Positions 670 to 63,685 of a DNA stretch of 64,000 bases are shown here, piece after piece. A model generated the notes under the pieces. It was not told where the DNA came from. It worked only from the letters and a program-made list of their open reading frames with translations, and did not search any database. The stretch covers positions 145,848-209,847 of IMG/VR virus record IMGVR_UViG_3300034073_003542. The stretch is one strand, 5' to 3'. Made by a program: the position numbers and the translations under genes. The stretch's first letter is position 1. Each line of letters opens with the position of its first letter.

Positions 670-1109
670 TATACAACTTCCTTAGTAACGGTTTCAACTG
701 GCTCACGACGCTTGAGTTTGAGAATCTTGTGCGGAACCTTAGTTACACCAGTCTCCTTATTATAGTATTCTGGCCCCATATAGATATGGGCGATTCCGCC
801 ACTCTTATCAATGCCCCACGCTAAAATTCCTTTATCGTCAATCGATTCAACAGAAAACTTGCCACGATAACCCATAGGAATGAGTTCACCTTCTTTTAGA
901 TAATACGGGCCTTGGGCTACCTTGATTTTATCGCCTTTCTGTAAAGATCGCCAATCAAAGTTCTTGATACCTTTATGAGTACGCTTTTCTTGGGCGGATA
1001 CGGTTGTATCTTTCTTACTAATAAAGACATGGTTACAGTTTGAACACACATAAGTTCTCGGCCCTGTTTCACCCAAACAATCCGGGCAGACCTTTTTGCC
1101 TCTCGCCAT
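669..1109 (-). CDS. hypothetical protein with N-terminal zinc ribbon
   Basis: CPDC...CSNC motif; GGAG RBS; promoter at 1146-1173. Confidence 0.65.
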   Translation of the reverse strand: MARGKKVCPDCLGETGPRTYVCSNCNHVFISKKDTTVSAQEKRTHKGIKNFDWRSLQKGDKIKVAQGPYYLKEGELIPMGYRGKFSVESIDDKGILAWGIDKSGGIAHIYMGPEYYNKETGVTKVPHKILKLKRREPVETVTKEVV

Positions 1110-1145
1110 GAAAATTCTCCAAAGTGTTATCGTTCTTATGCTGCT

Positions 1146-1173
1146 AGTATACCAGAAGAAGCTGGTGTGTCAA
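1146..1173 (-). promoter_or_regulatory. sigma70-like promoter TTGACA-N16-TATACT with extended -10 TG
   Basis: minus strand reads TTGACA caccagcttcttctgg TATACT. Confidence 0.75.
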
Positions 1174-2511
1174 CAGACTTAGGTAAACCGTCTACGATAG
1201 TCAAGTTTCCTGCTGAATAATGACAAAAATAACTTTGGGCAATTTTTCTCTTCATCAAACCTTCTTGCTCAATTTCAATATAGACATTAATACGATAACG
1301 ATTATCCCATAGATTAATAACCTTAGTCATATAGTGATGCTTAGGTTTTTTAACTTGCTTGTATAGAAGAGATTCAATTTCTAGACTCATGTTATACTCC
1401 GTTTCTATTCAAAAATTGTATCAGAATTGATAGTTAGAACAGTTTTGTCTCCAAGCCGAAATATATCTACACCTTTTTCTTCGCCCGTGTTGGCGTCGTG
1501 TAAGACTATTTCTTCTTGCCAATTAAATTCGCCCATTTTCTCCATATCATGAGCTTGATCGTACAGATAATTATAGAGGTCTAACCAGTTCAAAATATTC
1601 TCCTTTATTTAGTCTATTCTAATCATACTGCCTTTTAACCAACCGGACGTAACTGCTCCAGTAATAATTTGTCCAGATGGTGATTTTGCTCGGAAACCTG
1701 TAGAAAACGTATCTTCTTTTCCTGCCATAAATGGTCGCCAACCCGTAATTTCTATTTCGCTATATCCTTGCGATTCTAGAACCCGTGTTGCATCATCTGG
1801 TCTAATTAGTCCTTGTGGTAGTGCTATAGAAAAAAGTGTTACAAGTAAGATCACTCCAACTGATACAGCAATAATTTTTAGAACACCAGACATCATAGCT
1901 TTATTTTCATAATAAGCTCTGTTCAAAATACTTTCTCCTTATTCATATGACACTCTAAGCAATGTTGACAATGTTTACATATTGTGATTTCGACATTATT
2001 ATATTCCTCAAAATTACTACATATTTCAGGAATATTATCTGGATCAAACCAATCATCAATATCACAAATACATCCAGTAGGAATATATGACTCATCCATT
2101 AGAATAAGTTCAGATTTTGAAACTCTTTCCATACAATGAGGACAAACATGATATTGCTTTGGTGTCATTTTTGTATTGTACCAGCGATCTTGGTTTTGTC
2201 AAGTCGAGCAGGGTCGTTTGGCTGAAACTCCACATCTATTTCTGGTTGAGGTAATGTTGGAGCTATTGTCACATCTTCCTCATTAACATCAGCAACAGAG
2301 AATAATCTAATACGTTTTGGTTCTGGTTTGTTTAGTTTTTCATCCATCATTAATCTCCTCTATACTATAAACCTTAACGATATTATATATAAGCCCGCAA
2401 GTTCCCTCAAAAGCTAATTGTGCCTCTTTTTCTGTATTTGCATTAATTACGTCATTATAAAGAATTGTTTGTTTATATGGATCGGCCTTCTTATAAACTT
2501 GTGCTGTTACA

Positions 2512-3450
2512 TTAAACTGTTTCGACTGCATTATATTTTTCTCCATAATCTTTTAGGAATTGAGATATAGCCACGTTTTTTTGCTTGAACTCATAGTCTA
2601 TGGTTGCTGGTAACAAAAATAGCTCTTCGTGAAGCTCATAAACATAATCTGAATGAGCTTTGTCTGTAGGAGATGCTTTGCCATTACTAAAGTGCATAAC
2701 TGGCGTAATATCTCGCCATGTTTCATAACACATTACCATAGCAGTCTCAGGATCAATACCAACATTATTTAGTCGATGATGGTGAGAATCGTATGTTATG
2801 GGAATTTGTGTAGCAGGATGGAAAATCTCTACTAATTCTTGTACATTCCAACAATTAGGTTTGTCGTCAATTTCGATAGTAATGCGCGATTTACAATTAT
2901 CGTGCAATTGGTCAAAAGATTTGAGAAATCGCCCAATAATTTCTTCGTGGGAGCCTTGCTTGTTATTGATATGAAAGTTAATGGGCGAATTATGATTAGT
3001 TGGAAGTCCGATGCGGTCGAAAAACCAACTATAGAAATTTAGTTCTTGAATAGAGTTCTTGACGGCATTTTCATTAGTAGATGCTAATACCACATAAGGA
3101 CTCGGGTGGTTTGAAATTCTAACACTAGATTGCTCGATTGTTGATTTGATATTAGTAAATTCATTATCAATATCGTTATAATTAGGCAAATCTTCTAGCT
3201 TAACATTAGCTTCGTCCATTGTGATAAGGGGAAACAGAGAAGAAGAACAACGATAATCCCAACCTAATTGATCGCACGTTTGAATAATTTTGGTAGTTAC
3301 TTTGAGATTATTAAGAATTCGCCCACCTAATATTGCTAGGGCATCTTGTCTAGGTAAAGCTGAAAATCTAGAAAATGTCATTGTCTGGAACTCGTATCCA
3401 GATTTCTTTTTATCTGCCAAATAAATACAGCATAGAGAAGGTTTGTTCAT
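2512..3450 (-). CDS. uvsE: UV damage endonuclease (UvsE/UVDE)
   Basis: YRCSSSLFP, RISNHP..VVLAS, INFH, YDSHHH, HFS, HSDY motifs of the UVDE TIM barrel. Confidence 0.9.
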   Translation of the reverse strand: MNKPSLCCIYLADKKKSGYEFQTMTFSRFSALPRQDALAILGGRILNNLKVTTKIIQTCDQLGWDYRCSSSLFPLITMDEANVKLEDLPNYNDIDNEFTNIKSTIEQSSVRISNHPSPYVVLASTNENAVKNSIQELNFYSWFFDRIGLPTNHNSPINFHINNKQGSHEEIIGRFLKSFDQLHDNCKSRITIEIDDKPNCWNVQELVEIFHPATQIPITYDSHHHRLNNVGIDPETAMVMCYETWRDITPVMHFSNGKASPTDKAHSDYVYELHEELFLLPATIDYEFKQKNVAISQFLKDYGEKYNAVETV

Positions 3451-3480
3451 AACCCTATTATACCCTAGTCCGTGGATTTG

Positions 3481-6603: not shown

Positions 6604-6609
6604 ACTGTT

Positions 6610-13941: not shown

Positions 13942-14649
13942 TTAAGTCCACATTGACCCCCTTAATTCTATGAGTTTGATTAATTTTTCTGTATCTTCTT
14001 TTTCGTATTGTTCTTCTAATTCTTCCGCTTGTTTGTATCTTTGTTTTTTGTCTAAGTAGTGAGATATTGGATTTTTGTTTTCTTTTTCTTCGTAGAAGTC
14101 CATCGGATCTTTTCTATTAGGGCGATGGATTGTCCACCATTCATAAAGTTCTCGAAATTGTTTCGCTGCTTCTATTTGGTGATCGGGACAAGGATATTCT
14201 TCATTCACACTGTTTTCGGCCCAAGCGACATATCTATAAAATCCTTCCTTACCTTTTTCGTTCTTTTTTCCAGATCGCCCACCTATTTCGCCCTCACAAA
14301 ATTCATAACAGAAAGCATCAAACAAACAATGTAAGATACGAGTATCCATGTCGTACCATTCACCACGAGGAAGTTTACTTACAAGAGCGTGTGTATGATT
14401 AACGAAACGATTTCTATATTCGCACTGGATACTCCACCATAAATCACCTGGGAAGTATACAATATTTTGTAGTGTATCTAGGAATTCTTCAGCAAACCAA
14501 TATCTCCAAGAATGTTTGGCTTTTAATTCTTTTCTCCAATTATCCCATCCTTCAAAAGAAAGATAGTGTGGTTTTTTCTCACCTCTGATCCAGTTCGCAA
14601 ATTTAGAACATGACCAGTAATTGATTCGTGTGCGTTTTCTTAGCATCAT
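13942..14649 (-). CDS. conserved Trp-rich phage hypothetical protein
   Basis: 235-aa ORF ending LIELRGSMWT. Confidence 0.7.
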   Translation of the reverse strand: MMLRKRTRINYWSCSKFANWIRGEKKPHYLSFEGWDNWRKELKAKHSWRYWFAEEFLDTLQNIVYFPGDLWWSIQCEYRNRFVNHTHALVSKLPRGEWYDMDTRILHCLFDAFCYEFCEGEIGGRSGKKNEKGKEGFYRYVAWAENSVNEEYPCPDHQIEAAKQFRELYEWWTIHRPNRKDPMDFYEEKENKNPISHYLDKKQRYKQAEELEEQYEKEDTEKLIKLIELRGSMWT

Positions 14650-24553: not shown

Positions 24554-24599
24554 ACACCTCACTTAAACACAACCGAGCCAGGATTCGACACGATATCCT

Positions 24600-44417: not shown

Positions 44418-44673
44418 TAGGTGTAATAACTAGATCACCAGTAATACGAACCAATTTCTTAGTCTCAGAATCCATGAAAAAGTATCCATCACTTTCTCTC
44501 TCACTCAAAACTTTACCAGTAGAAATCCATTCGTGAACCTTTTGACCTCCCGACCAAAACTCCACACGATGTTTCGCTCCATAAGCATCAAACTGAGAAC
44601 GATAAGCGTCGGTACATCCAGCTCCAACAAAAAGAATCAAGCATAGTACAAAGTATCTCATGTGTTTCTTCAT
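44410..44673 (-). CDS. putative lipoprotein
   Basis: signal peptide with GAGC lipobox. Confidence 0.6.
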
Positions 44674-47379: not shown

Positions 47380-48617
47380 TCGCTTTTCCTGCTCAATTCC
47401 TATTTTGTCTAAATTAGGTAAGTAATTAGTCCTTTTGTGGGTTCTATTCCATGCCAAATAGGTCTAATTGGGTTTCTTGTGGGGAATTCACCATAATTTA
47501 TATATTGGTCTTAGATCGAGAGTATGGGCCTATTAGGGCTATTGTATGACCAATTTTTGGTCTGTCAAGAGGGAGTATTTCCTTCCATTAATTATTTCAA
47601 AACAAGACAAAAACAACATAAATATAGTATAATACCCACCATAAACATACCTAGTATACCTATACCAAGATAACCTTTTAAAGTTAGAAGAAATGTCATT
47701 TATTATAAGTAAGAAAACCCTCTATTTCCTCCTCGGCAAAATATACTAAAAAAAATCTGTCAATATTGATTTGAAAAACATTGTTTTCACGGCAAAAATG
47801 CATGTTTTTGATGCAGATAGGAATTTTAATAGGGAAAATCACGGCATTTTCATACATTTCTAATTAAAAACATACAATTTCTCGGCAATTTTGATGCTTT
47901 TTGAATCAAAAGTCACAAAGATTCAAAGGTTCTTGGGCGAAATTAGACGAAATTTTCATCAAAAAATAATCGTTCAAATTCCCCGAAAGTAAGTGCGAAG
48001 TGTATGGTATATTCCTCAGTGAAAAAGTGTATTAACTCTCGGGAAAAATGAGTTTTTTGAAAAATGACACTTGCCAAAAACTGGGCCTCTCTTATAATGA
48101 TTTATAGGCTCTGACTGCCACAAGGTCTAAGATGAACCTAAAGATGGGCCGCGATCTGCCATCAACAAATCCATCCAGCCTCTTTTTGGCGAACAATTTG
48201 TCACTTTAGTAATTGGTCTGTTGGCGGTGAAAACCCGCAATGATTTGTAACGATGTTGTCTACTGCCCTGGTTACAAACATAGAAAATGTCAGCAGAACA
48301 GATAGGGATTAGTTGGTCATCTGTGTAAAAGACCATCAGTAAAGCTCAGTCGCTCACTCTCAAGAGAAGTCGCTTGATCTTAATACTTTCTTCCTAATTT
48401 TGGAAGGGAGTATTCTAGAACGCTAGCTCTAAGAGAAATCATCGTGTGAAGAAAAGGTTTTGAGAAGAATGGGGCGAAAAGGTAATTGGGAGATGAAGAG
48501 TAGTGCAGGCTGAAGATTTCCTGAATAGTAAGGAAATCAGAAGCCAAACGGAACTTAGGAAGAGTAAGAATAGAAACTAATAGAATCTAGTATAGAGAAG
48601 AATTTAGGAAACTCATG
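47380..48617. other. ~1.2-kb non-coding region (origin or ncRNA candidate)
   Basis: no credible ORF; A/T tracts, divergent promoters, hairpins. Confidence 0.5.
48071..48098 (+). promoter_or_regulatory. promoter TTGCCA-N16-TATAAT
   Basis: near-consensus hexamers, 16-nt spacer. Confidence 0.55.
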
Positions 48618-49738
48618 TTATGTAATAAGTTTCTTCTCAGTGACGCCCAGGTGAACGGGCGAATCTTGGGATAGGTTATAGAAAATCCTAAGAGCTTTTT
48701 TTAGAGTCGCCAAATCTTCAAATAATCCTACGTCTGGGTCTATAAATTTCCCATCAGCATTATTAGAATTTATTGCTAATTTGAGCTTGCCACTTGGTCT
48801 TAAATAAAAGAGCGAGTCTTCTGTAGTTGTACAAAAAACATACTTAAATTCTTTTTCTGTATGGATAAGTTTTCCGTTTGTACCAAAAATATATGGATAT
48901 ACGGAAATATAAAATTCCCGAAAATACATAGTAGTTCCGTCAAACATAAATTTCTTTTTTAGTAATAGGTATATCTAGCACCACATTACTCTTATAAAAT
49001 AAAGAGAGGGCCGCTTCTATTTCAAAAAATTCATGAAAGGTATGTGTCGCTGCATCAATAATAATTCTAGGATTAGTTACTTCTCCCGCTTTACTTAAAT
49101 AACCCATTTCACACCAACAAAAATAATATTCATTAGTGGTCTCTCCCTCAGAATTATATGGGCCTGTGTATATCTCAAAATCTTTATATCTCCCAATCAT
49201 ATTAACTCCTTTTTGGTTCTTTGTATATGGGTGGGCGATCCATAATATTTAGCCAAAGTCTCTTCTACTGCTTCAATAGAAGGAAAATATGTTCTAATAC
49301 CTATTATAAGTTTTCCTTCCTCATCTAGATAAGTGTTAGATTGATTTGTTGTCGCCCAGTATAATGTGACACTATTTGTTTTTCCTAAATTGAATATTGA
49401 TACTCCCACCCAAAAGTCTTTATATCGTAATATGTTCATACTAATTCTTTGTGGGTTCTAGGAATATCTAATTTGATGGGCGAATTATAATAAAGAGAAA
49501 GAGCTGACTCTACTTCTTCCAGAGAATAGAACCTATGTATCTCTGCATTAAATGCGGTATCTAGTGACCCTTCCTTAGATAAGTGCTTGTAAAAATAAGT
49601 AGAAGGAGTTCCATAAAAATAAATAGTTGCCCAGTATAAAGTTCTAAAATCATTAATAGAGTCAATAGGAGGTCTACCAGAAGTTATTTCAAAATCTCTA
49701 AATTGAACTCTTATAAACATATCCATCCATTCTACCAT
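48618..49738 (-). CDS. four tandem paralogous small ORFs (fifth member at 46376-46636)
   Basis: shared [FY][RK][DE]F...[YH]L...G...E.AL..[YF]Y...T.K[EK][LI] pattern. Confidence 0.75.
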
Positions 49739-49872
49739 AAACCCAATGGGTTGTCAAACTCGCTGACTATCGCGCATGTTCCGAACTTATTAGTTTAGGA
49801 GGAACACGCCCACCCGTCTTTTTGGTGTACTATATTAGTGAATCAATATCTACCAATTAGGAGCACCCCCTT

Positions 49873-50202
49873 ATGGCCTTCAACTCTGCACCATCTGGTT
49901 ATTTTCCAAATATTAATGTAGGAGAAGTTGTAGGAGGAGTAACAGGTGTCTTTATTCCTTGGTCAGACTTAGAAGCTTTTGATACTTCTACTTCTGGAGA
50001 TATACGCCAATTAGCTTATGCTTTTAATCAAGGAATGTATAATGGATATTCTGGTTTAGCAACGGCAGATAAGCCTGACGAAATGACAATCAGACTCGCT
50101 AAAACTTTTCCAACTCCTGCTACTATTCGTCATACTTATACTAACATCTTCAATCTTGATTTTAATGCCGAACTAGTAATGACTCCGGAACCAACAGGCT
50201 AA
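49873..50202 (+). CDS. hypothetical protein, possibly late/virion
   Basis: AGGAG RBS; TGGTGTA motif upstream. Confidence 0.6.
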   Translation: MAFNSAPSGYFPNINVGEVVGGVTGVFIPWSDLEAFDTSTSGDIRQLAYAFNQGMYNGYSGLATADKPDEMTIRLAKTFPTPATIRHTYTNIFNLDFNAELVMTPEPTG

Positions 50203-50412
50203 AATGGATGAAAAAATTAAAAAACATATTCTAGAAATAGAACATAACATTTCTCAGATTCATAAGTTGTCTGAGTGTGTAGCTAATGTTTTAAATAATG
50301 AATGTGCCTTAATTAAGAATAATAATCCATTAGAAGATACAGAAAGTAAATGTAATTGTATTAAGCAGAACATTGCTAATGTTGAACAACTACTAGATGA
50401 AACAAAAAATAC

Positions 50413-50745
50413 ATGAAACTATTTGGATTTAATTGGGGACTTACCAAAAAATCGTCAGAAGAACTTTTTGGCGGACGCGACCCTCAATGGGATGGGGTTC
50501 GTAAGCAACATCTTAAAAAAGAAAATTTGTGCCAAGCTTGTTTGACTAAAGATAATTTAGAAGTACATCATATAATTCCTTTTCATTTAAGGCCAGACTT
50601 AGAACTAGATCCAGCAAATCTAATAACTTTGTGTGCTCAAAAATGTCATTTGTTATTTGGCCATCTAATGAATTATAAATCCTATAATAGTAATGTTATT
50701 GAAGACTGTAAAAAGATGCAAGAAAATATCAAAAATCGCCCTTGA
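50413..50745 (+). CDS. small HNH endonuclease
   Basis: CQAC, LEVHHIIP, NLITLC...CH motifs. Confidence 0.85.
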   Translation: MKLFGFNWGLTKKSSEELFGGRDPQWDGVRKQHLKKENLCQACLTKDNLEVHHIIPFHLRPDLELDPANLITLCAQKCHLLFGHLMNYKSYNSNVIEDCKKMQENIKNRP

Positions 50746-50769
50746 CACACGTTTTTCTTATGGTACAAT
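50742..50769 (+). promoter_or_regulatory. promoter TTGACA-N16-TACAAT
   Basis: hexamers with extended TG. Confidence 0.7.
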
Positions 50770-51553
50770 GGGTGGATGGAACAAGAATGGGCGGTTGTTA
50801 ATAAAGATAGCAATTCCGTTTTTCTAGATCGCTCATTTCCAACACAAGAAAAAGCTCAAGAAGCTATACTACTATATTCAGTATATTTTGTTATTCCTGA
50901 TGTTAAAATTATTCCAAATAATGAAGTTAAGATTACTTTAAAAACATTGTCATGAAAGAAGCGATTCCTATAAGTGTCTATTATTGCGCAGATAGAGACA
51001 TTTTTTGCTGGAAATTTATTCATTCCATAGGAAAGCCAGCATTTTATCCTTACCCAAAATATACAGACTTTCATAAGAAATGGATTGGGCGAAAAGAAGA
51101 ATTTCCTCCCCTACAAATAACAGAAAAAACATTAATATGATAGAAGGTATTCCACCCGATACTTATTGGGATGATGAACTAGATCTATTTTATCATATTT
51201 TTGAATTCTATGGACTACCCGCCAAATCATTTGAAAATATATATTTCACCCAAAAATGGATTGGACGAAAAGATGAATTTCCCAAACTGCCAAAAACTGA
51301 GAAAACTATAGTATGACACTAATACAATATTCAGAGTGGTTGTTTTTGGGCGGATTATTTTTATGTGTGTGGCCCATTATATATCTTTTAATCTTCAAAA
51401 AATTATCAGAAGACTTAATGATCGCCTCTTTCATACTAGGAGCAATCATAGCAAACATAGGATTCTGGGTTTCCTTAGTGAAATGGATTGTATGGTTAGC
51501 TATTATTTCTATTGAAAATCGCCCATAGAACTCTTTTCTGCGTAACCAACCCC

Positions 51554-51581
51554 TTGACAGGCCGGATTTTTTAGATATAAT
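51554..51581 (+). promoter_or_regulatory. promoter TTGACA-N16-TATAAT
   Basis: perfect hexamers. Confidence 0.75.
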
Positions 51582-54500
51582 AGGATGACAGCTAAGAGTC
51601 CTAAACATTTGGCTGACTATGAGCAACTAAAGCAAATCCGAAGGATCGGCTGGAACATCTGACTATAGGAATTTTTATGAAGAAAAATCATGACGAATTA
51701 GAAGTTTATCCAATAGGCACTCAAGTTCTTATGTCAACAATGGAAGGTACTATTATTGGTATTCAAATCAGACATAACAATTATGTCTTGTATGAAGTTA
51801 GTTATTTTGATAAGGGCGAAAAGAAAACTCAGTGGTTAGAATCTCTGGAGATTAATCCTGAAGTTAAAGATAAGAAAAAGATAGGATTCCTATAAGAGTC
51901 CTCAATAACTCGCTGACTACGAGCAACTGGGGCAAATCCGAAGGATAGGGAGAAACAAATTATGCAACTTCGTTGGTTACAAAATATTCTTCAATATTCT
52001 ACAATAGAAGTTGACGATAAGAATAATAGTAGAGAAGTCTGGCATGCGGTTCCCAGAGTAGAAGGGGACCAAATAGAAGTTGCTAGAAAAGTTATGCAGG
52101 AAGATAAGGAAGTACTTGATAAACTAGCCAAGAATTATTTGGGCGACTAATCAAGTGATCCTCAAATCTCGCTGACTATCATATTTTGGCTGACTACCGC
52201 CAACATTCCGAATCCGAAGGATTGGCTCAGACACGCCCATTATTGTCTGGCGCTGTCAAATATTTCCATCTTTTCGATAGTCTTAATGGGAATATAAACA
52301 ACAGAACCACCATCAATAACCATAATCAAATTAGGATTCTGACATCCTTCTGAGGGCGAGTCATAAATTTTTCGCCCACCGCCTTTTGTTACAATAAGAA
52401 CTTTTGGGTCTTTCATCTTTGAAACCAAATCAACAGCACTAATCAACATTTTAGCTCCTTATACTATATACTTGCGGCGAACTTTAAGAGAACAGATATT
52501 CTCTTTATAAATTTGGTCAAACAATTCTGTGTCTACCATTTCTGCGTCTAGAGATTCAAACATCCACTTAGGAATTTCAATATGGTGAAACTCCCATGTG
52601 TTGTTGTGGAATAGAACATAAACCTCGGCCATATATCGCATTATCTTAACCTATAAATTCCGTGATTTTCTTCAAATTCTTTCATATGATCAACAACAAT
52701 TTGACAAGCCATATCTTTTACATCTTCAAGATATTCTACTTCACCAAATTGTGACTCAAGTAAAACAATTAAGTCTTCCTGAATCTGTTCACTAATTTCT
52801 CTAATACTTTTACTCATCATCTTCTTCCTTTTCATAAAGATTACTCTCTAATGATTCCGCCCAATCTCTAACATTAGAATCGCGTATAAAATCAATAAGG
52901 GCATCACACGCCGCCGAGTTGTCTGACAGAAATACTTCGACCAGACTTCCAAAACGAAACCCATGAGGCTTATAGCCGAGAGCTTCAATGATTCTTTCCA
53001 AGTTTTTAAGGCCGCTATCGCCCTCAAAATTATGAATCTTTTCTTGATCCATAAACTCTTCAAGAAGTTCATTCATCATCTTCTTCTACTCCAAGTATTT
53101 CTGGATAATACTCTAAAATCTCTGTTTCAAGTTGTTTGTGCGTATATTCATCTTTATCTTTACTTAAATAATCATAAGCTAATGAAGCTAGAGTATCTAT
53201 ATCCATACCATCAATCATCTGTTGGATATATTCATCTTGAATCTTATCACGATTTTCTGCGTTTATCAACATTTTTTGCTCCGTGTGTACTGTACGAATC
53301 CTATTCTACCACCCTACTAAGGATTGTCAATAGTGGGCTTATTAGTATCGAAATATTGACAATTCACTAATTGGGTATGACAATAGTATCTATCGTATTC
53401 TATTCTAGACATATGTTCAATAGAATCATTAATAATAGAATCCCACTGCCAATCTTTTGGATTAGTATAAGTGTCATCAAATTCGATATTGAGCGTAACT
53501 ACACAGATTTTTTTCAAGTCACAACTCCCTTACTTTCCTACGCAACATTGACAATATCCACAAATCACACATAGACCAAAAATCAAGTATACCATAGACG
53601 CCTCCTTTGTCAAGTAATGTAACAGGGCCAGAAGCCACCATTGTACCACAGACGCCTGCTAGTCGCAAGTCGTTGGCATTACTAGACTTAGGTTAGGTCA
53701 TTCTTCTTGGAGGTTTGATGAAACTGCCCCTCATTCCTTTCAAACTGGACAACTTCTCTATAAGTAGGCACAGTTAGCTGTCCAAAATAAAGATCGCAGT
53801 CCCTCAATACTACTTCACCATTTCTTTTTAACAGAAAATTAGTTACATTATCAAGCGAGTACGGGTCTAATGCTCCTTCGTGAAGGGCAATTACCTCATA
53901 ATGAATAGTGTCGAATTGATATTGGGCGATTACAGTTTGCATTATGTCCCTTTCAAAAATTATAGAGAATACTCACAAAAAGATTTTAATGTATTATTAT
54001 ACACAGGAGAATGATAAACTCCAACACTCAACCCCCTTTGTTGATAAAAGACTCCCTTACGAAAGTCTATGGGGCCAATTTCGTGATCTATTTTTTGTAT
54101 AAAATCATTAGCATAATCTTCAGCCGCCCAATAATCAATAAATGACTTACAGTCTTCCACAGAATTGTCTCTTACTACAACAAAGGTATACATTATATTT
54201 CTCCTAAATAGTAATTAACCAAAGCCAAGCTACACAAACACCAAAAATAAGCGATATATCAGTTATCATTTATTTTCTCCATTAGTTTATCAAATTTTAT
54301 CTGACACTCTTCCATAGTTCCTTCCCATATAAAATGACCACCACAAAAAAACTCAATAGCCCCATCACACTCCTCATAAGAATCACACTGGAGAACTGGT
54401 CCCATTTCATTCATTATGGTGAATTTCATTTTTTTCTCCGTAGAGGGTTGGTTTTCTGGTTTTTCGCCCAAAACAATACTATTTTCTTTCTGCATAACCA

Positions 54501-56950: not shown

Positions 56951-57453
56951 TTCTTTTCTCCGGGTTATCGTTTCCTGTTCACTGATTATAGCATAGGTGC
57001 AGTGGCTGTCAACAGTTTTTTCGCTGGCTATCGTCATAATTTCGAATCTGGTAGATTGAGTGGAACATAATCGTTGGAGATAGAATATTCAAAAGCTTTT
57101 ATCTGATCTAGATTATCAATACTCAGAATAAGCTTTCCAGTTTTTCTAATTTGATTTTCTTGCCACTTTACATTAGCAGTAGCATTCTTGCTCATTCTCC
57201 AACCAGGCCATTGATGATCATTATATCTATTGAGAATAACAATCAGAGAATTTACATCGCCCCTAACATGGGCGTATTGAGCGAATGGAAATCCACCAGT
57301 TTTTTGGAATTTAAAAGTACTAGCTTTTGGTCCCTGAATTGTATTGATATTGATTTTTAATCTAGCGTCATTAATATGAACACTAGAAGCAATACATATA
57401 GACGAGAAGTGTATCGAGAAGAGAATGAAGAGAGTTAAGATGGGTTTCATAAG

Positions 57454-57527
57454 TAGCTGCGGTGAGGGTCGAACTCACACTGTTCGGATTTTAAGTCCGA
57501 TTTCTCTGCCTGTTGGAATACGCAGCC
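57454..57527 (-). tRNA. tRNA-Leu(TAA), short variable loop
   Basis: TCGGA CTTAAAA TCCGA anticodon arm. Confidence 0.9.
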
Positions 57528-57531
57528 ATAA

Positions 57532-57606
57532 TACCGGGAACTGGATTTGAACCAGCACTGTTATGCTTCTAAGGCATATGTCTCCTGCCAATTGGACTAC
57601 CCCGGC
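57532..57606 (-). tRNA. tRNA-Leu(TAG), short variable loop
   Basis: TATGC CTTAGAA GCATA. Confidence 0.9.
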
Positions 57607-57614
57607 GTGTCAAG

Positions 57615-57688
57615 TAGGAAGTATTGGAGTCGAACCAATCTTTTGAGTACCTTATAAGAGTACGTGCCACTACCGGCGGCAACTTCCC
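57615..57688 (-). tRNA. tRNA-Ile(TAT)
   Basis: GTACT CTTATAA GGTAC. Confidence 0.85.
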
Positions 57689-57727
57689 ATGTTTTTTATT
57701 ATACACCGACGCTGGAGAAAAGTCAAG

Positions 57728-57800
57728 TAGACCGGGTGAGAGTCGAACTCACGATAGGCGGATTAAAAGTCCGCTACTTTAGCCGCTAAGTTACCGATCC
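57728..57800 (-). tRNA. tRNA-Lys(TTT)
   Basis: GCGGA CTTTTAA TCCGC. Confidence 0.92.
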
Positions 57801-57908
57801 ATGTTCAGTCAAGTATACCATACCCTTCTCTGTTGTCAACCCCTCAATTTTGTGTCTGCCATTTTGGCAGCCTCGCTACTCCGCCTGTCAAATTGGCAGT
57901 GTCTGAAG

Positions 57909-57979
57909 TGAGTGATGAAAGAATCGAACTTTCGTCGAGATGTTAAGAGCATCCTATAATACCATTATACTAATCACCC
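57909..57979 (-). tRNA. tRNA-Lys(CTT)
   Basis: GGATG CTCTTAA CATCT. Confidence 0.9.
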
Positions 57980-57983
57980 GAAA

Positions 57984-58068
57984 TGCAGAGTTGGGGAGTC
58001 GAACCCTATCCTTCCGTCCAGTTCATTAAGGAACGAGCTTAGAACGCACGTACTGGCTGCAACCCTGC
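57984..58068 (-). tRNA. non-canonical D-armless tRNA-Arg(TCT)
   Basis: GCAGGGT/ACTCTGC acceptor, ACGTGC GTTCTAA GCTCGT anticodon arm, TTCGACT T loop; own promoter at 58079-58106. Confidence 0.65.
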
Positions 58069-58107
58069 GTGTCGATACATTATACATTACCGAATCGAAC
58101 TGTCAAG

Positions 58108-58197
58108 CGAAGGACAAGAGGATTGAACTCTCACCGGGTTTTTAATCCGGCCTACTTTTCCAAAGTAGTGCAGCAAACCAATATCTGCCTATCCTTC
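58108..58197 (-). tRNA. tRNA-Ser(GGA)
   Basis: CTACT TTGGAAA AGTAG; long variable arm. Confidence 0.9.
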
Positions 58198-58212
58198 ATA
58201 GAACCAAACAAG

Positions 58213-58298
58213 CGGAGGCGAAAGGAATCGAACCTTCGAGGGTTTTTTAGGCCCCAGCTATTTTCAAGATAGTGTCCTCGACCTACCGGACCACCTCC
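58213..58298 (-). tRNA. tRNA-Ser(TGA)
   Basis: CTAT CTTGAAA ATAG; long variable arm. Confidence 0.9.
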
Positions 58299-58311
58299 AT
58301 ATATTATCAAG

Positions 58312-58396
58312 CGGAAGTAGCAGGGTTCGAACCTGCAAGCCTTTTTAGGGGCCAACTCTTTAGCAAAGAGCTTCCTCACCAACTCGGATTACTTCC
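58312..58396 (-). tRNA. tRNA-Ser(GCT)
   Basis: GCTCT TTGCTAA AGAGT; long variable arm. Confidence 0.9.
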
Positions 58397-58401
58397 ATTA
58401 G

Positions 58402-58483
58402 CACTAGAAGTAGGACTCGAACCTACAGTGTCTTTCGACGGGAGATTAACAGTCTCCTGCGTTTACCATTCCGCCACTCTAGT
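58402..58483 (-). tRNA. tRNA-Asn(GTT) with long variable arm
   Basis: GGAGA CTGTTAA TCTCC; extra GTC GAAA GAC arm. Confidence 0.85.
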
Positions 58484-58497
58484 ATGATTATCGTCAG

Positions 58498-58570
58498 GGT
58501 GGCTAATGGGAGTCGAACCCATATCACTTGATTCACAGTCAAGCCGCTTCACCAGTTAGCGTATAACCAC
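58498..58570 (-). tRNA. tRNA-His(GTG)
   Basis: CTTGA CTGTGAA TCAAG; C discriminator. Confidence 0.9.
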
Positions 58571-58572
58571 AG

Positions 58573-58643
58573 TTCCGGGGCTACGATTCGAACGTAGAAT
58601 AAATGGTCCAAAGCCATTTGTGATACCATTTCACTACCCCGGA
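58573..58643 (-). tRNA. tRNA-Gln(TTG)
   Basis: AATGG CTTTGGA CCATT. Confidence 0.9.
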
Positions 58644-58898
58644 ATGTTAAGCGTCTCTATGCGATCCGCTTAGTTTTTTACTTTCTCTCAAATACTCAGC
58701 AATCTCTATGAGCTTCTTTCCAAGTTCTTCAATGTTGTCTGCTTCTTTTTTAGTAAGCCACGAAGCAACGTGCATGAAAAGATAATTCTCTTTACCTTTG
58801 GTTCTCACTCCAGCAACCCCGACAGACGGGTTATTAAACTCTTGTGGAAAGTTTCTCATCATGCACCTAGTTTAGCATAACTTCAAGAAGTTGTCAAG

Positions 58899-58971
58899 TG
58901 GAGCAAGTCAGAGTCGAACTGACATGGCGAGATTTTCAGTCTCGTGCCGTGACCGCGTAGGCTATTGCTCC
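58899..58971 (-). tRNA. tRNA-Phe(GAA)
   Basis: CGAGA CTGAAAA TCTCG. Confidence 0.9.
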
Positions 58972-58982
58972 ATAATTATCAG

Positions 58983-59056
58983 TCCTCAATGTAGGCATCG
59001 AACCCACTACCTTCTCGGTGTAAACGAGACGCTCTAGCCGAATGAGCTAATTGAGG
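58983..59056 (-). tRNA. tRNA-Val(TAC)
   Basis: TCTCG TTTACAC CGAGA. Confidence 0.9.
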
Positions 59057-59061
59057 ATATA

Positions 59062-59133
59062 TCTAGAATGTCGAAATCGAATCGCTCTTGCTTGCCCCAA
59101 ACAAGCCGTGCAAACCATTACACTTCATTCTAG
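59062..59133 (-). tRNA. tRNA-Pro(TGG)
   Basis: GCTTG TTTGGGG CAAGC; weak T stem. Confidence 0.8.
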
Positions 59134-59153
59134 TTATTTAACAGTCTTGAACA

Positions 59154-59225
59154 AGTTGATGATAGGAGTTGAACCTACAACTAACTTCATACCAAGAAGC
59201 TACTCTACCATTGAGTTACATCAAC
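59154..59225 (-). tRNA. tRNA-Thr(GGT)
   Basis: GCTTC TTGGTAT GAAGT. Confidence 0.9.
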
Positions 59226-59228
59226 ATA

Positions 59229-59299
59229 AGCCAATACGAGGAATCGAACCCCGGTGTTCTCATTACAAGTGAGACGTAATTCCACTATACGATACTGGC
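59229..59299 (-). tRNA. tRNA-Thr(TGT)
   Basis: TCTCA CTTGTAA TGAGA. Confidence 0.9.
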
Positions 59300-59305
59300 A
59301 AATTA

Positions 59306-59379
59306 TGCGTCTATCCAGATTCGAACTGGAACATTCAGTTTGGAAGACTGACAGGCTAGCCGTTGAACCTCATAGACGC
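59306..59379 (-). tRNA. tRNA-Gly(TCC)
   Basis: TCAGT CTTCCAA ACTGA. Confidence 0.9.
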
Positions 59380-59385
59380 GTTTAG

Positions 59386-59457
59386 TGACCCTACTGAGAA
59401 TCGAACTCAGATTGCTAGATTGAAAGTCTAGATTCCTAACCATTAGAAGATAGGGCC
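59386..59457 (-). tRNA. tRNA-Glu(TTC)
   Basis: CTAGA CTTTCAA TCTAG. Confidence 0.9.
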
Positions 59458-59496
59458 ATATCATTTCATTATACCAACTCTTTTCATTCTGTCAAG

Positions 59497-59567
59497 TGGA
59501 CCGTAAGAGAATCGAACTCTTATTTGAAGCTTGCAAAGCTACCGTTCTCCCGTTGAACTAACAGCCC
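59497..59567 (-). tRNA. tRNA-Ala(TGC)
   Basis: AGC TTTGCAA GCT; G3:U70. Confidence 0.9.
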
Positions 59568-59574
59568 ATATCTA

Positions 59575-59648
59575 TCCGCTAGGAAAGAGTCGAACTTTCG
59601 TCTCGAACTTATCAGGTTCGCATTCTAAAACCGTTGAAATACTAGCGG
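59575..59648 (-). tRNA. tRNA-Ile(GAT)
   Basis: CGAAC CTGATAA GTTCG. Confidence 0.9.
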
Positions 59649-59655
59649 TCAAAAG

Positions 59656-59741
59656 TCCCCCGTAGAAGAATTGAACTACCCGGCAGCCACCTATTAATTT
59701 AATGCCCCGTGTTTTACAGACACAGAATAGGAGTACGAGGG
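59656..59741 (-). tRNA. non-canonical D-armless tRNA-Tyr(GTA)
   Basis: CCCTCGT/ACGGGGG acceptor, CTGTGT CTGTAAA ACACGG anticodon arm, TTCAATT T loop. Confidence 0.7.
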
Positions 59742-59763
59742 AAATTATCATCATACATATCAG

Positions 59764-59836
59764 CGATTCTACCGGGAATCGAACCCGGATTTCCAGATGG
59801 ACAGTCTAGCGTCGTGAACCGTTGGACCATAGAACC
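59764..59836 (-). tRNA. tRNA-Asp(GTC)
   Basis: CTAGA CTGTCCA TCTGG. Confidence 0.88.
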
Positions 59837-59842
59837 GTTAAG

Positions 59843-59914
59843 TGGGTCGTGAATGATTTGCACATTCGTCTCTGGTTTCGTAGACCAGTATACTATCTAC
59901 TATACTAACAACCC
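59843..59914 (-). tRNA. tRNA-Arg(ACG)
   Basis: CTGGT CTACGAA ACCAG. Confidence 0.88.
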
Positions 59915-59920
59915 ATATTA

Positions 59921-60003
59921 TGTCGGCGGCGGGATTTGAACCACTTTAATGCGATTTCAAGTTTATGAGACTTGCGAGGACGACCAGACTCCTCTACGCC
60001 GAA
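59921..60003 (-). tRNA. tRNA-Met(CAT), initiator-like, with T-stem insertion
   Basis: CAAGT CTCATAA ACTTG; 1:72 mismatch. Confidence 0.75.
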
Positions 60004-60004
60004 A

Positions 60005-60075
60005 TGCCTCTTGCTTGAATTGAACAAGCGTCAACTTCGTATGAAAAAGTTAGATTACCACTATCCTAAAGAGGC
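60005..60075 (-). tRNA. tRNA with CAT anticodon (elongator Met or Ile2)
   Basis: ACTTT TTCATAC GAAGT. Confidence 0.8.
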
Positions 60076-60080
60076 GAAAG

Positions 60081-60151
60081 CATACTCACAAGGATTCGAG
60101 CCTTGACCAACTGTTTTGGAGACAGTGATGCTACCGTTACACCATGAGTAT
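60081..60151 (-). tRNA. tRNA-Trp(CCA)
   Basis: ACTGT CTCCAAA ACAGT; G discriminator. Confidence 0.88.
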
Positions 60152-60172
60152 GTGTTTTTTATGAAACCCGAA

Positions 60173-60547: not shown

Positions 60548-60578
60548 AAAAAACCCGCAGGATTCAAAGTCCCACGGG
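60548..60578 (-). terminator. intrinsic terminator
   Basis: CCCGTGGGA ctttgaa TCCTGCGGG followed by T6. Confidence 0.75.
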
Positions 60579-60782
60579 CTTCTCGCCTCAATAGCGGTAA
60601 TGAGTCTCTATTTTATACTAAGCTAACCGCTATTCCGCAGTCGGTCAAGACGTAAGATTGTTGACTAGACTAGCTTAGGCAAAGTTGCGCATCCTTTGCA
60701 TTTTCTACGCAAGACGGAATGGATACCGTCCTGCCGCTTTGGGCCTAAAGTCTGTTTATTCTCGCCCAAACGAGCCGCTGAT

Positions 60783-61073
60783 TCACTCAGCCGCAGCTTC
60801 CGCAGGAGCTTCAAGGTTCGGAGCCTTGACCTTCTTCGGATTGGCCGAATCGCCAGCCTGCTCCGCAGTCTCACCCGTCACACGAGCACGCCACACCTTG
60901 TAGCCCTGCTCCGTAAACGTCTTGACTGCACCAGCCTTGACGCCAATGTTCTCAACCGAATCACCAAACCGCTCGTCCAGAAAATCCGCAATCGCCTGAG
61001 CAACCGCTTCACGATCAACGCTACCAGCGGCAGCAACCAGACTCACATCAAACGCACACTTTTCACGCACCAT
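60783..61073 (-). CDS. small Ala-rich protein, probably highly expressed
   Basis: GGAG RBS, own promoter near 61124-61151, GC-richer codon usage. Confidence 0.7.
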   Translation of the reverse strand: MVREKCAFDVSLVAAAGSVDREAVAQAIADFLDERFGDSVENIGVKAGAVKTFTEQGYKVWRARVTGETAEQAGDSANPKKVKAPNLEAPAEAAAE

Positions 61074-63685
61074 TGCTATTTACTCCAAAAGACTATCGTT
61101 TCCAATCACTCACTACTACAACCATTATAGCAGCGTTTTACCACTTGTCAAGTCACATGAGCGAGTTTTGTTATTTGTGCTCTCGTCAGCGTCTTGTCTT
61201 GTGATACATGGATTATACCATACACTTCGTGTTAGTCAAGAGGGTAGGTCAAAAATCTTTTGTCTCAAACGGCGACGGCCTTTTTGGCACAGCGTTTGCT
61301 GTCGCGGTGTATGCTGCCATTTTGGCAGGCCTGGTAGCGAAGCTGCCATTTTGGCAGCCTAGTAATCTATTGATTCTGGATCAAAGTTTTCAATAATACT
61401 AGCTATATTATTTAGTGTCTCTGTTGCGTTTTCGCCACAAAAAGATTCGTCACCACATCGATCCCAGGTACGTTCTACTTCTGTATTGCGAATCATGTCA
61501 GCTAATACAGCACGGTCTTCCACAGCTATCTTACTGAGTACTTCTTCTTGTTCTATTGTTAATCTTATCATGATATTATACCGAGAAATTCATCTCCACA
61601 CACATATCAATAATCTCTTGAGCAGTAATATTGTGCTCTTTGATTGTGTTAGCAATTTCTTCTTGAGTTTTTTGGCTCATAAGAGCCATTCTGTTCCTAA
61701 TCGAAATAATTACTTTGAGAATTGCTTTGTTGCGTTCGCTACACATCATTTATTTCCGTATACGTATTTGTGGATTCGTTTTGATGCCTGCATATCTCGC
61801 CTTTTGAGTTCACCGTGGCAATACAGGATTTCGTCCGTGTAATAACCCACGTTCTCGCCATCAGGCATTGCAGCAATAACCTCGCGGCAATCTTGGATAG
61901 TGTATTCCAGTTCACTTTCCGACATCTTCTTTACTTTCCGCATATAAGCGGCGTGATCCATAATCTTTTTCATATTGGTATTATACCACAAGGAAATCGT
62001 TTGTCAAGTGCTCCTTATTTTGGCTGACTACGACCACTAAAACCGAATCCGAAGGATTGGCCGAGACAAGGGGAAGCCATAGCCCTTCATCAAAAGATTT
62101 GGAGTCTTTCGAAGGTTGCAATAAGGGCGGGTTTTCTGATTCCCTGTTCTCGACCAAATATTACCTATTCGTTATCGACAACACCCACATAGACCGCAAA
62201 CTACGCATAGAGTGAAAATACAATATACCATACTTTTCTCCTAGTGTCAAGTGGCCCAAAACCACATTATACCAGAAGGGCGGTTGTCCACAAGTGTTTG
62301 AGATATCTAGGGTTACGTTGGGTCTGCCTTTTTGGCAGCGAGGGCAGAGTGTCTGCCATTTTGGCAGTTACACAATTACTTCTACTTTAGATAGAATGTC
62401 TGAGGAAATTTCACTATAACATTCCCTAATAGTTTTACATTCCCCAATTATACTATGATCCCTATCATTCCACCATTGGTAAATCCGCCCAACTTTCTCA
62501 ACGTGGTAGCCGTACTGTTCGGCAAAAATCTGTAGTTTTCGTAATTGCATCTTATTGTCCGTGGAAAAGATATAAGCCAAATGAAAAAATCATCACAGAC
62601 ATTATCATATCAAGTGCCGGATATTTAGCCTCTTTAGGACTGATAGTAAATATCAGTAGTTGCCCAACAATCCACCCGATATTCATAGCGACAAGCGAGC
62701 TAATGCTAAATGTAATCATTTTTCATTCCAGTCGTTGAAACACACAGTACAAATTAAGCAATTCATTCCACAAATCATCGTATTACCAATCAAATATTGA
62801 TAACTAGGACTATTCATAGAAAAAATAGCAATGAGAGAAGTGACAACGAAACACACATATCGAAGCATTTTTGTATTCATATTTGTCCTTTATACCAATA
62901 GTTTATTGACTAGGCAATTCGCCCCAAACTTCTTTATTGCGTCAGTTTCGGCAGCTTGTTGACAAAACGCCAAAACATAACCGACAAAACGACCTTCCTG
63001 CACAACTCTGTAAGTGATTTCTAGCATAATAGGATTATATCATAATGGTTGGAGTTGTCAATAGGCTTATTCATCCATTATCCATTTTCCAAGTTTTTGT
63101 GTTTTTCTGCCAAGTCCCTTGCCAAGTCTGTAGCTCGTAGATTGCTGATCTGCTGGCTTAAAGATAATATACCAAATAAAGCCAAACACCAAAATCGCAC
63201 CTAATACTTCCATTATACTAAATCGCCTTTCTTTTTTTTATTTATTATTTATATGTATTCTACTCAGAAACGTCACCAAATAACTCATCCCAATCAGACA
63301 CAGAAAATCCTGTTAGTAGTAGCTCTCGTTCGTCTGCTGTTAAATATGGAAAACAGTGCTGTATAGCCTTTTCTCCATTACAAAAATCTACAAAATCTTC
63401 CTTATTGACTACCATAGTGAACGGCACGCCATCCCGACTACTGCCCATGAATGTAACATCCCCAGAATTATCACATTCGTACACATGCACATATTCACTT
63501 AGACCATAGCACTTACGTTTGCAATTAGTGACAAGCATCGTAGCACCTCATGTTGTTTAGCAGTAACGGAATTATACCATATGGATACACCATGTCAAGC
63601 TCTATGCCATTTTGGCAGTGCCTCGACCGAAACTGCCAGATTGGCAGTAAGCCGTAGCTCACCACCGATCTGGAGTCGGATTTTA

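What the first reader, a model, noticed from the sequence alone, without database searches (positions are those of the whole stretch)
780..62930. Strong genome-wide over-representation of GGGCGA/TCGCCC
Seen: by eye I counted roughly 60-65 occurrences on the two strands (e.g. near 787, 2928, 2982, 6154, 6247, 6393, 7019, 16179, 27317, 34566, 46839, 46860, 51087, 52141), mostly as TGGGCGA[T/A], in all reading frames and in intergenic DNA. At an assumed ~33% GC the zero-order expectation is about 5 per 64 kb. Inference: a highly iterated non-palindromic signal analogous to Chi, HIP1 or uptake sequences. It could be a site for DNA modification, a protective DNA-binding protein, recombination, or packaging/ejection.
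Basis: partly seen in the sequence, partly recalled or inferred. Interest (0 to 1): 0.7.

Follow-up and report, generated by a model that had tools for sequence, protein, structure and literature searches.

The report
Over-represented TGGGCGA motif in jumbo phage
An uncultivated 210-kb phage has packed its genome with a short asymmetric DNA word (core GGGCG, best form TGGGCGA) by choosing unusual synonymous codons, which shows a selected DNA-level signal that looks most like the 'Chi' sites some phages collect to tame the host's DNA-end nuclease, although its reader is not identified.

Summary
GGGCGA occurs 65 times in the window (about 8 expected) and 154 times in the 209,847-bp phage genome. 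The true core is the pentamer GGGCG/CGCCC: 306 copies against about 75 expected, while every one-base neighbour sits near 1x. Preferred flanks give (T)TGGGCGA, at 12.7x.

The excess survives synonymous-codon shuffling (306 vs 105±7) and amino-acid/codon/dinucleotide-preserving shuffling (163±8). It is about 4x in all six frame and orientation classes, in intergenic DNA and in every genome module, so it is a DNA-level, strand-symmetric signal and not a coding artefact. Glycine codon GGC rises from 12-15% to 42% exactly where it completes the word.

Relatives with 60-72% identical DnaE lack the excess. A distant relative carries its own word, GGGCT (5.8x).

The phage encodes no DNA methyltransferase of the four Pfam families searched, no TGT/DpdA and no Gam.

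Best reading (confidence about 0.35): a Chi-like sequence that modulates a host AddAB-type helicase-nuclease, as in Chi-rich P1, LLS and MD8. Against it: there is no orientation bias, the phage has its own RecA and nuclease, and none of about 450 Bacteroidota genomes shows a comparable excess. The host is unknown.

Rivals are a site for an unidentified DNA-binding factor, a repair or mutation bias, and a modification target.

The parts
788..62924 (.). The set of 65 GGGCGA/TCGCCC copies (19 on +, 46 on -) and 107 GGGCG/CGCCC cores in the window. This is the right-hand 64 kb of a genome-wide set of 154 and 306.
   Evidence: About 4x over the synonymous-shuffle null in every genome module and in both orientations.
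44001..54500 (.). Densest stretch: 22 GGGCGA copies in 10.5 kb on both strands, in a region of short ORFs and spacers. Genome bin 190-200 kb has 28 GGGCG cores, 9.8x.
   Evidence: Intergenic copies listed lie at no fixed distance from gene starts.
46839..46865 (-). Two TGGGCGAA copies in direct orientation, 21 nt apart (46839-46844 and 46860-46865).
   Evidence: genome 192686 and 192707.
14275..14293 (-). Two GGGCGA copies in direct orientation, 13 nt apart.
   Evidence: genome 160122 and 160135.
52354..52377 (.). The only close inverted pair in the window (GGGCGA at 52354-52359 on + and at 52372-52377 on -). It could form a short hairpin. This arrangement is exceptional, so the motif is not a stem-loop element.
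57453..60151 (-). Array of 24 tRNA genes that holds no GGGCGA copy (neighbouring copies lie at 57257 and 60762). Genome bin 200-210 kb, which contains it, is only 1.5x for the GGGCG core. This sequence cannot be recoded synonymously.
2929..2988 (.). Copies inside the UvdE-like gene (2512-3450, - strand), one in sense (2929-2934) and one in antisense (2983-2988). They illustrate that both orientations occur within one gene.

Best explanation
Shown: the phage lineage has accumulated, by selection acting on the DNA itself, about 300 copies of an asymmetric 5-nt core, GGGCG. The optimum context is (T)TGGGCGA. Copies are spread over both strands, all reading frames and intergenic DNA, and were created largely by synonymous codon choice. 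Inferred: the most likely role is Chi-like. The word would be read on single-stranded DNA by the host's DNA-end-processing helicase-nuclease (AddAB type in Bacteroidota) as it enters a free end of the phage chromosome or of replication concatemers. Recognition would switch the enzyme from degradation to producing a 3' tail for RecA. That would protect phage DNA and feed recombination-dependent replication. Copies on both strands would serve ends facing either way, as expected if the ends are variable (headful or permuted packaging).
For: GGGCG is the top outlier word: 306 vs 73-77 expected, z about 26, with all 15 one-base neighbours at 0.7-1.6x. It survives synonymous and dicodon shuffles. 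It is enriched in all six frame/orientation classes and in intergenic DNA, at about 4x in each module. GGC is 42% of Gly codons only in the G_G context, against 12-15% elsewhere. Flank preferences are the same in sense, antisense and intergenic copies. Relatives keep the amino acids but not the word in 56 of 63 orthologous comparisons. The trait is absent from 60-72% DnaE relatives. A distant relative has a similar but distinct word, GGGCT, with the same T-rich 5' flank. This resembles the way Chi differs between related hosts. Known Chi-rich phages (P1, LLS, MD8) show the same signature: Chi is the most frequent oligomer, lies in ORFs and non-ORFs alike, and is sporadic among relatives. AddAB-type Chi sequences are 5-7 nt, G-rich and contain GCG (AGCGG, GAAGCGG, GCGCGTG). 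No Gam-type inhibitor, no DNA methyltransferase of the four Pfam families searched and no TGT were found. The RtcB gene places the phage among Bacteroidota, whose Chi was unknown as of the 2010 study read here.
Against: There is no orientation bias beyond coding constraints and no strong terminal clustering, unlike LLS and MD8. Only the perfect 7-mer is about 2x denser in the right third. The phage has its own RecA (with an intein) and a PD-(D/E)XK nuclease, whereas Chi-rich lambdoids lack Rec modules. Relatives with the same genes lack the motif. Spacing is clustered, not regular. None of about 450 sampled Bacteroidota genomes shows a comparable excess, and three checked at sequence level are unremarkable. 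The host is unknown. No biochemical link to any nuclease exists.
Confidence: 0.35

Rival explanations
1. The motif is the recognition site of an unidentified sequence-specific duplex-DNA-binding or DNA-processing protein, phage- or host-encoded. Possible roles are genome compaction or organisation, marking of phage DNA as self for a phage nuclease that destroys host DNA, or a replication or priming factor. It would act independently of orientation.
For: Enrichment is equal on both strands and uniform across modules, as expected for duplex recognition. Flank preferences are graded and PWM-like: TGGGCGA 12.7x, TGGGCGG 6.8x, others 1-4x. A related but distinct word in a distant relative suggests a diverging specificity. 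Most of the roughly 270 genes have no assigned function.
Against: There is no candidate gene. The conserved primase, helicase, RecA and nuclease are shared with relatives that lack the motif. No known precedent has about 300 five-to-seven-nt sites for a phage DNA-binding protein. Spacing is irregular.
Confidence: 0.25
2. The excess is a neutral by-product of a context-specific mutation or repair bias. An example is very-short-patch-type repair that restores this word after deamination, which would raise its equilibrium frequency in an AT-rich genome without the word having a function.
For: The excess is uniform, strand-symmetric and context-independent in coding and non-coding DNA. Spacing is not regular and there is no positional pattern within genes. 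The trait varies between lineages, as expected if it depends on one enzyme.
Against: No C5 methyltransferase was found in the phage. The transition-derived neighbours that such repair would deplete are near 1x: AGGCG 0.8, GAGCG 1.2, GGACG 0.7, GGGCA 1.0, GGGTG 1.2. A 4-13x effect with extra flank specificity far exceeds my recollection (unchecked) of the Dcm/Vsr effect in E. coli. Sampled Bacteroidota genomes show no such excess, which argues against a host repair bias.
Confidence: 0.12
3. The word is the target of a site-specific DNA modification (methylation, deazaguanine or glycosylation) that protects the phage.
For: The genome encodes several glycosyltransferases and a radical-SAM/B12 enzyme of unknown substrate. 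The relative L064, which has its own word, carries an N6/N4 DNA methyltransferase.
Against: G000 has none of the four main DNA methyltransferase families and no TGT/DpdA. Modification targets are not normally selected to be more frequent. The complete avoidance of many 6-bp palindromes argues that the DNA is exposed to restriction, not globally protected.
Confidence: 0.06
4. The excess is a coding artefact: a Gly-Asp/Gly-Glu, Trp-Ala or Gly-Arg codon-pair or amino-acid bias.
For: The commonest single class is xxG-GGC-Gxx in the sense frame (115 of 306), often Leu-Gly-Asp/Glu.
Against: Shuffles that preserve protein sequence, codon usage and dinucleotides still leave a 1.9-2.9x excess at z 14-27. 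Antisense frames and intergenic DNA are as enriched as sense frames. Relatives encoding the same residues lack the word.
Confidence: 0.02

Closest known systems
Chi-enriched phage genomes (P1; lambdoid LLS; Pseudomonas phage MD8)
   Same: A short asymmetric G-rich word is the most over-represented oligomer of the phage. It is not explained by codon usage and is present in ORFs and non-ORFs. It is abundant in some phages and absent from close relatives.
   Different: Here the invariant core is 5 nt (7 with flanks), not 8. Both orientations are equally enriched and there is no marked end clustering, whereas LLS and MD8 have nearly all sites on one strand near one end. This phage carries RecA and a nuclease, whereas LLS-type phages lack Rec modules. 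The host enzyme and the host itself are unknown.
AddAB-type Chi sequences (B. subtilis AGCGG, S. aureus GAAGCGG, L. lactis GCGCGTG)
   Same: Length is 5-7 nt, G-rich, containing GCG. A 5-nt core is extended by flanks, as the B. subtilis core is extended in S. aureus.
   Different: The sequence is different. No activity assay exists. The chromosomal property (replication-co-oriented excess in the host) could not be tested. Sampled Bacteroidota genomes show only 1-3.5x and no outlier rank.
HIP1 of cyanobacteria and DNA uptake sequences (USS/DUS)
   Same: These are highly iterated short words spread through coding and non-coding DNA at many times the chance level.
   Different: HIP1 is an 8-bp palindrome tied to methyltransferases. 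USS and DUS are 9-12 nt, belong to competent bacteria and often sit as inverted pairs in terminators. This motif is asymmetric, 5-7 nt, in a phage that lacks the four methyltransferase families searched, and has one inverted pair in the window.
Very-short-patch repair footprint (Dcm/Vsr in E. coli)
   Same: It produces a strand-symmetric, genome-wide excess of a short word irrespective of coding.
   Different: It requires a C5 methyltransferase and Vsr and depletes the deamination neighbours. Neither is seen here, and the effect size here is far larger than I recall for Dcm/Vsr.

Membership tests
Chi sites / Chi-enriched phage | Short (5-8 nt), non-palindromic, G-rich word | tested here: met
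   Core GGGCG, optimum TGGGCGA; all one-base neighbours about 1x.
Chi sites / Chi-enriched phage | Most over-represented oligomer of the phage, beyond codon usage | tested here: met
   Top z at k = 5, 6, 7 and 8. 306 vs 105±7 under the synonymous shuffle and 163±8 under the dicodon shuffle.
Chi sites / Chi-enriched phage | Similar density in ORFs and non-ORFs and weak frame dependence (as Chi in P1) | tested here: met
   1.8-7.5x over the synonymous-shuffle null across the six frame/orientation classes (weakest: antisense frame 0, 1.8x). Fully intergenic DNA has 37 vs 11.2, or 3.3x.
Chi sites / Chi-enriched phage | Sporadic among related phages | tested here: met
   109 related loci pooled give 1.29x; none approaches 4x except the same phage.
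Chi sites / Chi-enriched phage | One active orientation relative to the DNA end, with clustering near that end | tested here: not met
   Sense and antisense are equally enriched in + and - gene modules. Only the perfect 7-mer is about 2x denser in the right 30%. The contig ends carry no repeats and may be arbitrary.
Chi sites / Chi-enriched phage | Phage lacks its own recombination module | tested here: not met
   RecA (with a LAGLIDADG intein) and a PD-(D/E)XK nuclease are present. They are also present in motif-free relatives.
Chi sites / Chi-enriched phage | Phage lacks a RecBCD/AddAB inhibitor | tested here: inconclusive
   No lambda Gam or Mu Gam family match. Unknown inhibitors cannot be excluded.
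Chi sites / Chi-enriched phage | Word is frequent and replication-co-oriented in the host chromosome | tested here: inconclusive
   The host is unknown. About 450 Bacteroidota genomes show no comparable excess. G005, G122 and G293 checked in sequence are unremarkable.
Chi sites / Chi-enriched phage | Recognised by RecBCD/AddAB with attenuation of nuclease activity | not testable with these tools
   This needs biochemistry or a rolling-circle plasmid assay.
HIP1-type iterated palindromes | Palindromic word with a cognate methyltransferase | tested here: not met
   GGGCG is asymmetric. No match to PF00145, PF01555, PF02086 or PF02384.
DNA uptake sequences | 9-12 nt word of a competent bacterium, often as inverted pairs in terminators | tested here: not met
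   No information beyond about 7-9 nt. One close inverted pair in the window. The replicon is a virus record.
VSP-repair footprint | C5 methyltransferase/Vsr present and deamination neighbours depleted | tested here: not met
   No PF00145 match. Neighbours are at 0.7-1.2x. The Vsr family itself was not searched.
Phage regulatory repeats (stoperators, start-associated sequences) | Repeats of 13 bp or more, at fixed positions or orientation relative to genes | tested here: not met
   The metagene profile is flat. Intergenic copies lie 1-2495 nt from starts in either orientation.

The most novel reading that the evidence does not exclude
The word is not Chi but a phage 'self' mark read in an orientation-independent way by a still unknown phage- or host-encoded factor. 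Its specificity drifts quickly within one clade of Bacteroidota-type jumbo phages (GGGCG here, GGGCT in the phage of locus L064). This would be a new kind of genome-wide identity signal in viruses.
Probability: 0.2. Interest if true: 0.8.

Novelty: new variant of a known kind. Interest (0 to 1): 0.6.

Why it matters
If the Chi-like reading is right, this phage gives the first candidate Chi sequence for a Bacteroidota AddAB enzyme. The Bacteroides fragilis Chi was reported as unknown in the 2010 study read here (PMC2887965). It would also show that the top over-represented word of an uncultivated phage can reveal the recombination hotspot of an uncultivated host, which makes a long-open question testable with a simple nuclease assay. 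If the reading is wrong, the data still document unusually strong lineage-specific selection on a 5-7-nt word. The selection reaches into synonymous codon choice (GGC use tripled in one context), and its reader remains to be found. In practice, such words confound codon-usage and host-prediction methods based on k-mers.

Tried and rejected
1. Apparent extreme strand polarity of TGGGCGA in Bacteroidota chromosomes. The all-'+' runs in the place lists were a listing artefact. Real sequence of G005:C1 1-400 kb has 36 on + and 56 on -, spread evenly. The lead was withdrawn.

2. Host genomes. Ratios to the reversed word looked high in G293, but that genome is 58% GC and the word is at 0.9x there. 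G122 had the highest share of TGGSSGA words, but it is 49% GC and the word ranks 1011th. G005 shows 2-2.9x and no skewed words. A class-level survey of a further 150 genomes gave nothing comparable.

3. Host identification. The UvdE search in genome contigs found nothing. RtcB points only to the phylum Bacteroidota, at about 50-56% identity everywhere. The protein atlas gave only viral clusters. Sequencing runs say only subsurface or soil metagenome.

4. Closer relatives for a gain/loss analysis. None is closer than about 72-78% DnaE identity in viral or metagenome contigs. L009 and L010 are 100% identical copies.

5. Population variation. 44 variant positions were found in 6 kb, none inside a motif, but only about 0.7 were expected, so the test has no power.

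6. Tenacibaculum phage PTm1, a cultured relative by RtcB only. It has no GGGCG excess (0.46x).

7. Motif-free long genes as recent imports. The gaps are explained by amino-acid content.

8. Genes present in relatives but absent here. These were only an RNR fragment, glycosyltransferases, unknowns and a methyltransferase confined to the distant L064 group. No inhibitor candidate emerged.

One fetch from genomes was largely wasted on a 10-kb contig.
Full report
What the sequence is. The window is the last 64 kb (145,848-209,847) of a single 209,847-bp virus record with 35.4% GC. CheckV rates it complete, and it has no terminal repeats. It carries a split DnaE polymerase, a Toprim primase, a DnaB helicase and a RecA interrupted by a LAGLIDADG intein. 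It also carries a PD-(D/E)XK nuclease, ribonucleotide reductase, RIIA, tail-fibre genes and a 5,102-codon ORF. The window holds 25 tRNA genes. The phage occurs in subsurface and soil metagenomes. Its RtcB is 50-56% identical to Bacteroidota proteins only, and weak DNA matches go to Tenacibaculum, Cellulophaga and Flavobacterium phages. It is therefore an uncultivated jumbo phage, probably of a Bacteroidota host. That host assignment is an inference.

The observation. GGGCGA/TCGCCC occurs 65 times in the window, against 8.15±2.88 in dinucleotide-preserving shuffles (maximum 18). The genome holds 154 copies against about 24 expected.

The real unit. Among all words, GGGCG/CGCCC is the strongest outlier: 306 copies against 73-77 expected. 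Even the maximal-order Markov model expects only 174. All 15 single-base neighbours lie between 0.7x and 1.6x. Longer words are explained by the pentamer plus flank preferences. T is found at -1 in 62% of sites, and A or G at +5 (219 of 306 copies). This gives TGGGCGA at 12.7x, TGGGCGG at 6.8x and the other flank combinations at 1-4x. The T-rich 5' flank and the A at +5 appear equally in sense, antisense and intergenic copies, so they belong to the DNA signal and not to a Leu-Gly-Asp codon string. No conservation extends further out, so this is not a longer repeat or a mobile element.

Not a coding artefact. Shuffling synonymous codons within each gene leaves 104.7±7.4 GGGCG (observed 306, z = 27). 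A shuffle that also preserves dinucleotides leaves 163±7.7 (z = 19). The excess appears in all three sense frames (3.3-4.1x), all three antisense frames (1.8-7.5x) and fully intergenic DNA (37 vs 11.2). The 2:1 sense bias is what coding constraints predict. Against the null, sense and antisense are each about 4x, both in the plus-strand structural module and in three blocks of minus-strand genes. Glycine codon GGC makes up 12-15% of glycine codons in general but 42% when the preceding base and the following base are both G. In orthologous genes of relatives, where the amino acids are identical, the relative lacks the word in 56 of 63 comparisons, for example TGG-GCG here against TGG-GCA there. 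RNA-level and translation-level explanations are thereby excluded.

Distribution. Copies are flat along gene length, and intergenic copies show no fixed distance or orientation to gene starts. Spacing is somewhat clustered (CV 1.29). There are 13 empty 2-kb windows against 5.6 expected for a Poisson process, so there is no sign of selection for regular spacing. Long motif-free genes are explained by their amino-acid content. The tRNA array carries no copy. The perfect 7-mer is about twice as dense in the window as elsewhere: 45 of 96 copies lie in 30% of the genome.

Relatives. The DnaE search returned 75 viral and 80 metagenome loci. Two of them are identical copies of this phage. The others, up to 72-78% identical in DnaE, show 1.29x when pooled, and no locus approaches this phage. 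Relative to the family's typical word usage, the only comparable outlier is L064 (46% DnaE identity). There GGGCT/AGCCC has 87 copies against 15 expected in 22 kb, on both strands, with neighbours low and again a T-rich 5' flank. Weaker G-rich outliers occur in L066/L067, L058 and L063. The trait is thus lineage-specific, and the word itself differs between lineages.

Gene content bearing on mechanism. No C5, N6/N4, D12 or N6_Mtase methyltransferase was found. There is also no TGT/DpdA, no UvrD-type helicase, and no lambda or Mu Gam. The PD-(D/E)XK nuclease, primase, DnaB and RecA are shared with 47-56 related loci that lack the word, so they do not explain it. L064 and its group carry an N6/N4 methyltransferase that this phage lacks.

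Host-side test. The Chi of Bacteroides AddAB was reported as unknown in 2010 (PMC2887965). I counted TGGGCGA, its reversed word and the four TGGSSGA words in 301 Bacteroidota genomes, and counted TGGGCGA and its reversed word in 150 genomes of one class, which partly overlap the first set. In the phage the word makes up 64% of TGGSSGA words and is 16 times as frequent as its reversal. No genome exceeds 54%, and the few with high ratios owe them to depletion of the reversed word or to high GC content. In sequence samples the word is at 0.9x in G293, 1.6-2x in G122 and 2-2.9x in G005, never an outlier, and G005 shows no strongly skewed words. An apparent perfect strand polarity in the tool's place lists was a listing artefact, and I withdrew it. 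The host itself was not identified, so this test is inconclusive. Published cases also show that Chi can be the top word in a phage while being unremarkable in its host. The Chi of phage MD8 ranks 43rd among octamers in Pseudomonas aeruginosa.

Interpretation. Two things are shown: strong lineage-specific selection (or bias) acting on duplex DNA for one asymmetric word, and its independence from transcription, translation and gene position. What reads the word is inferred.

The closest documented phenomenon is the accumulation of Chi by phages that depend on, or must survive, the host RecBCD/AddAB enzyme. [quoted passage not shown] AddAB-type Chi sequences are 5-7 nt, G-rich and contain GCG, which this word matches in kind.

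I therefore rank a Chi-like role first, at about 0.35. Several points count against it. Orientation is symmetric, which is compatible only with variable DNA ends. The phage has its own RecA and nuclease. Spacing is irregular. No host evidence exists.

The rivals are as follows. A site for an unknown duplex-binding or processing factor is at 0.25. A neutral repair or mutation bias is at 0.12; it is weakened by neighbours near 1x and by the absence of a C5 methyltransferase. A modification target is at 0.06; it is weakened by the absence of the four methyltransferase families searched and of TGT, and by the complete avoidance of many 6-bp palindromes, which shows the DNA is exposed to restriction. 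A coding artefact is at 0.02 and is refuted.

Novelty and score. Chi-rich phages are known. This case is a variant: a 5-nt core, no orientation bias, a jumbo phage with its own RecA, and a host phylum for which the one study read here (2010) reported no known Chi. Function is unproven, so interest is 0.6.

Noticed in passing
whole genome G000 (window included): Eight 6-bp palindromes are completely absent (CACGTG, CGATCG, CTCGAG, CTGCAG, GACGTC, GAGCTC, GGTACC, GTGCAC; about 21 sites of each expected). Several more are nearly absent (GGATCC, GTCGAC, CGTACG, TCGCGA, ATGCAT). This is strong restriction-site avoidance in a phage lacking the four methyltransferase families searched.
   Followed up: partly
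window 57453-60151 (-) and 29937-30008 (-): An array of 24 tRNA genes, plus a separate tRNA-Cys, covers most amino acids.
   Followed up: no
window 2512-3450, 19133-20158, 23174-24562 (all -): A UvdE-like UV endonuclease, an RNA ligase with a PHA02142 OB-fold domain, and RtcB together suggest a nucleic-acid repair toolkit. LAGLIDADG homing-endonuclease ORFs lie at 14848-15663 and 18271-19140.
   Followed up: partly
L004:11712-13757 (-) = genome 68712-70757: A bacterial-type RecA is interrupted by a LAGLIDADG-containing intein. DnaE is split into two ORFs, L004:3697-5592 and L004:1197-2834.
   Followed up: partly
L007:5136-6245 (-) = genome 119136-120245: A strong match to the Volactin family (actin-like protein; E = 6e-58) in a phage.
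   Followed up: no
L002:652-15960 (+) = genome 19652-34960: A single open reading frame of 5,102 codons lies in the structural module.
   Followed up: no
L005:6443-7423 (-): A 326-aa protein has a Major tropism determinant N-terminal domain. This hints at a receptor-binding protein of the type diversified by retroelements. No reverse transcriptase was looked for.
   Followed up: no
window 45458-45577, 46140-46193, 46263-46289: Short hypervariable patches, with many clustered substitutions in alternative contigs of runs X2 and X4, lie inside otherwise identical sequence. Alternative contigs also skip 44661-45112 and 45805-46108.
   Followed up: no
L064:1-21902: This distant relative has GGGCT/AGCCC at 5.8x, no GGCC at all (GGGCC and GGCCT both 0), and an N6/N4 DNA methyltransferase at L064:7130-7936. 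That methyltransferase is shared with L058, L066, L067 and L078.
   Followed up: partly
G001 (Bernardetia sp. chromosome, reached through L091): The reversed word AGCGGGT occurs once in about 6 Mb, while TGGGCGA occurs 240 times. This is an unexplained near-absence in a bacterial genome.
   Followed up: no
The genome search pattern output: The 'place' lists are truncated unevenly per strand and can mimic perfect strand polarity. The whole-genome counts in the same output are reliable (checked).
   Followed up: yes
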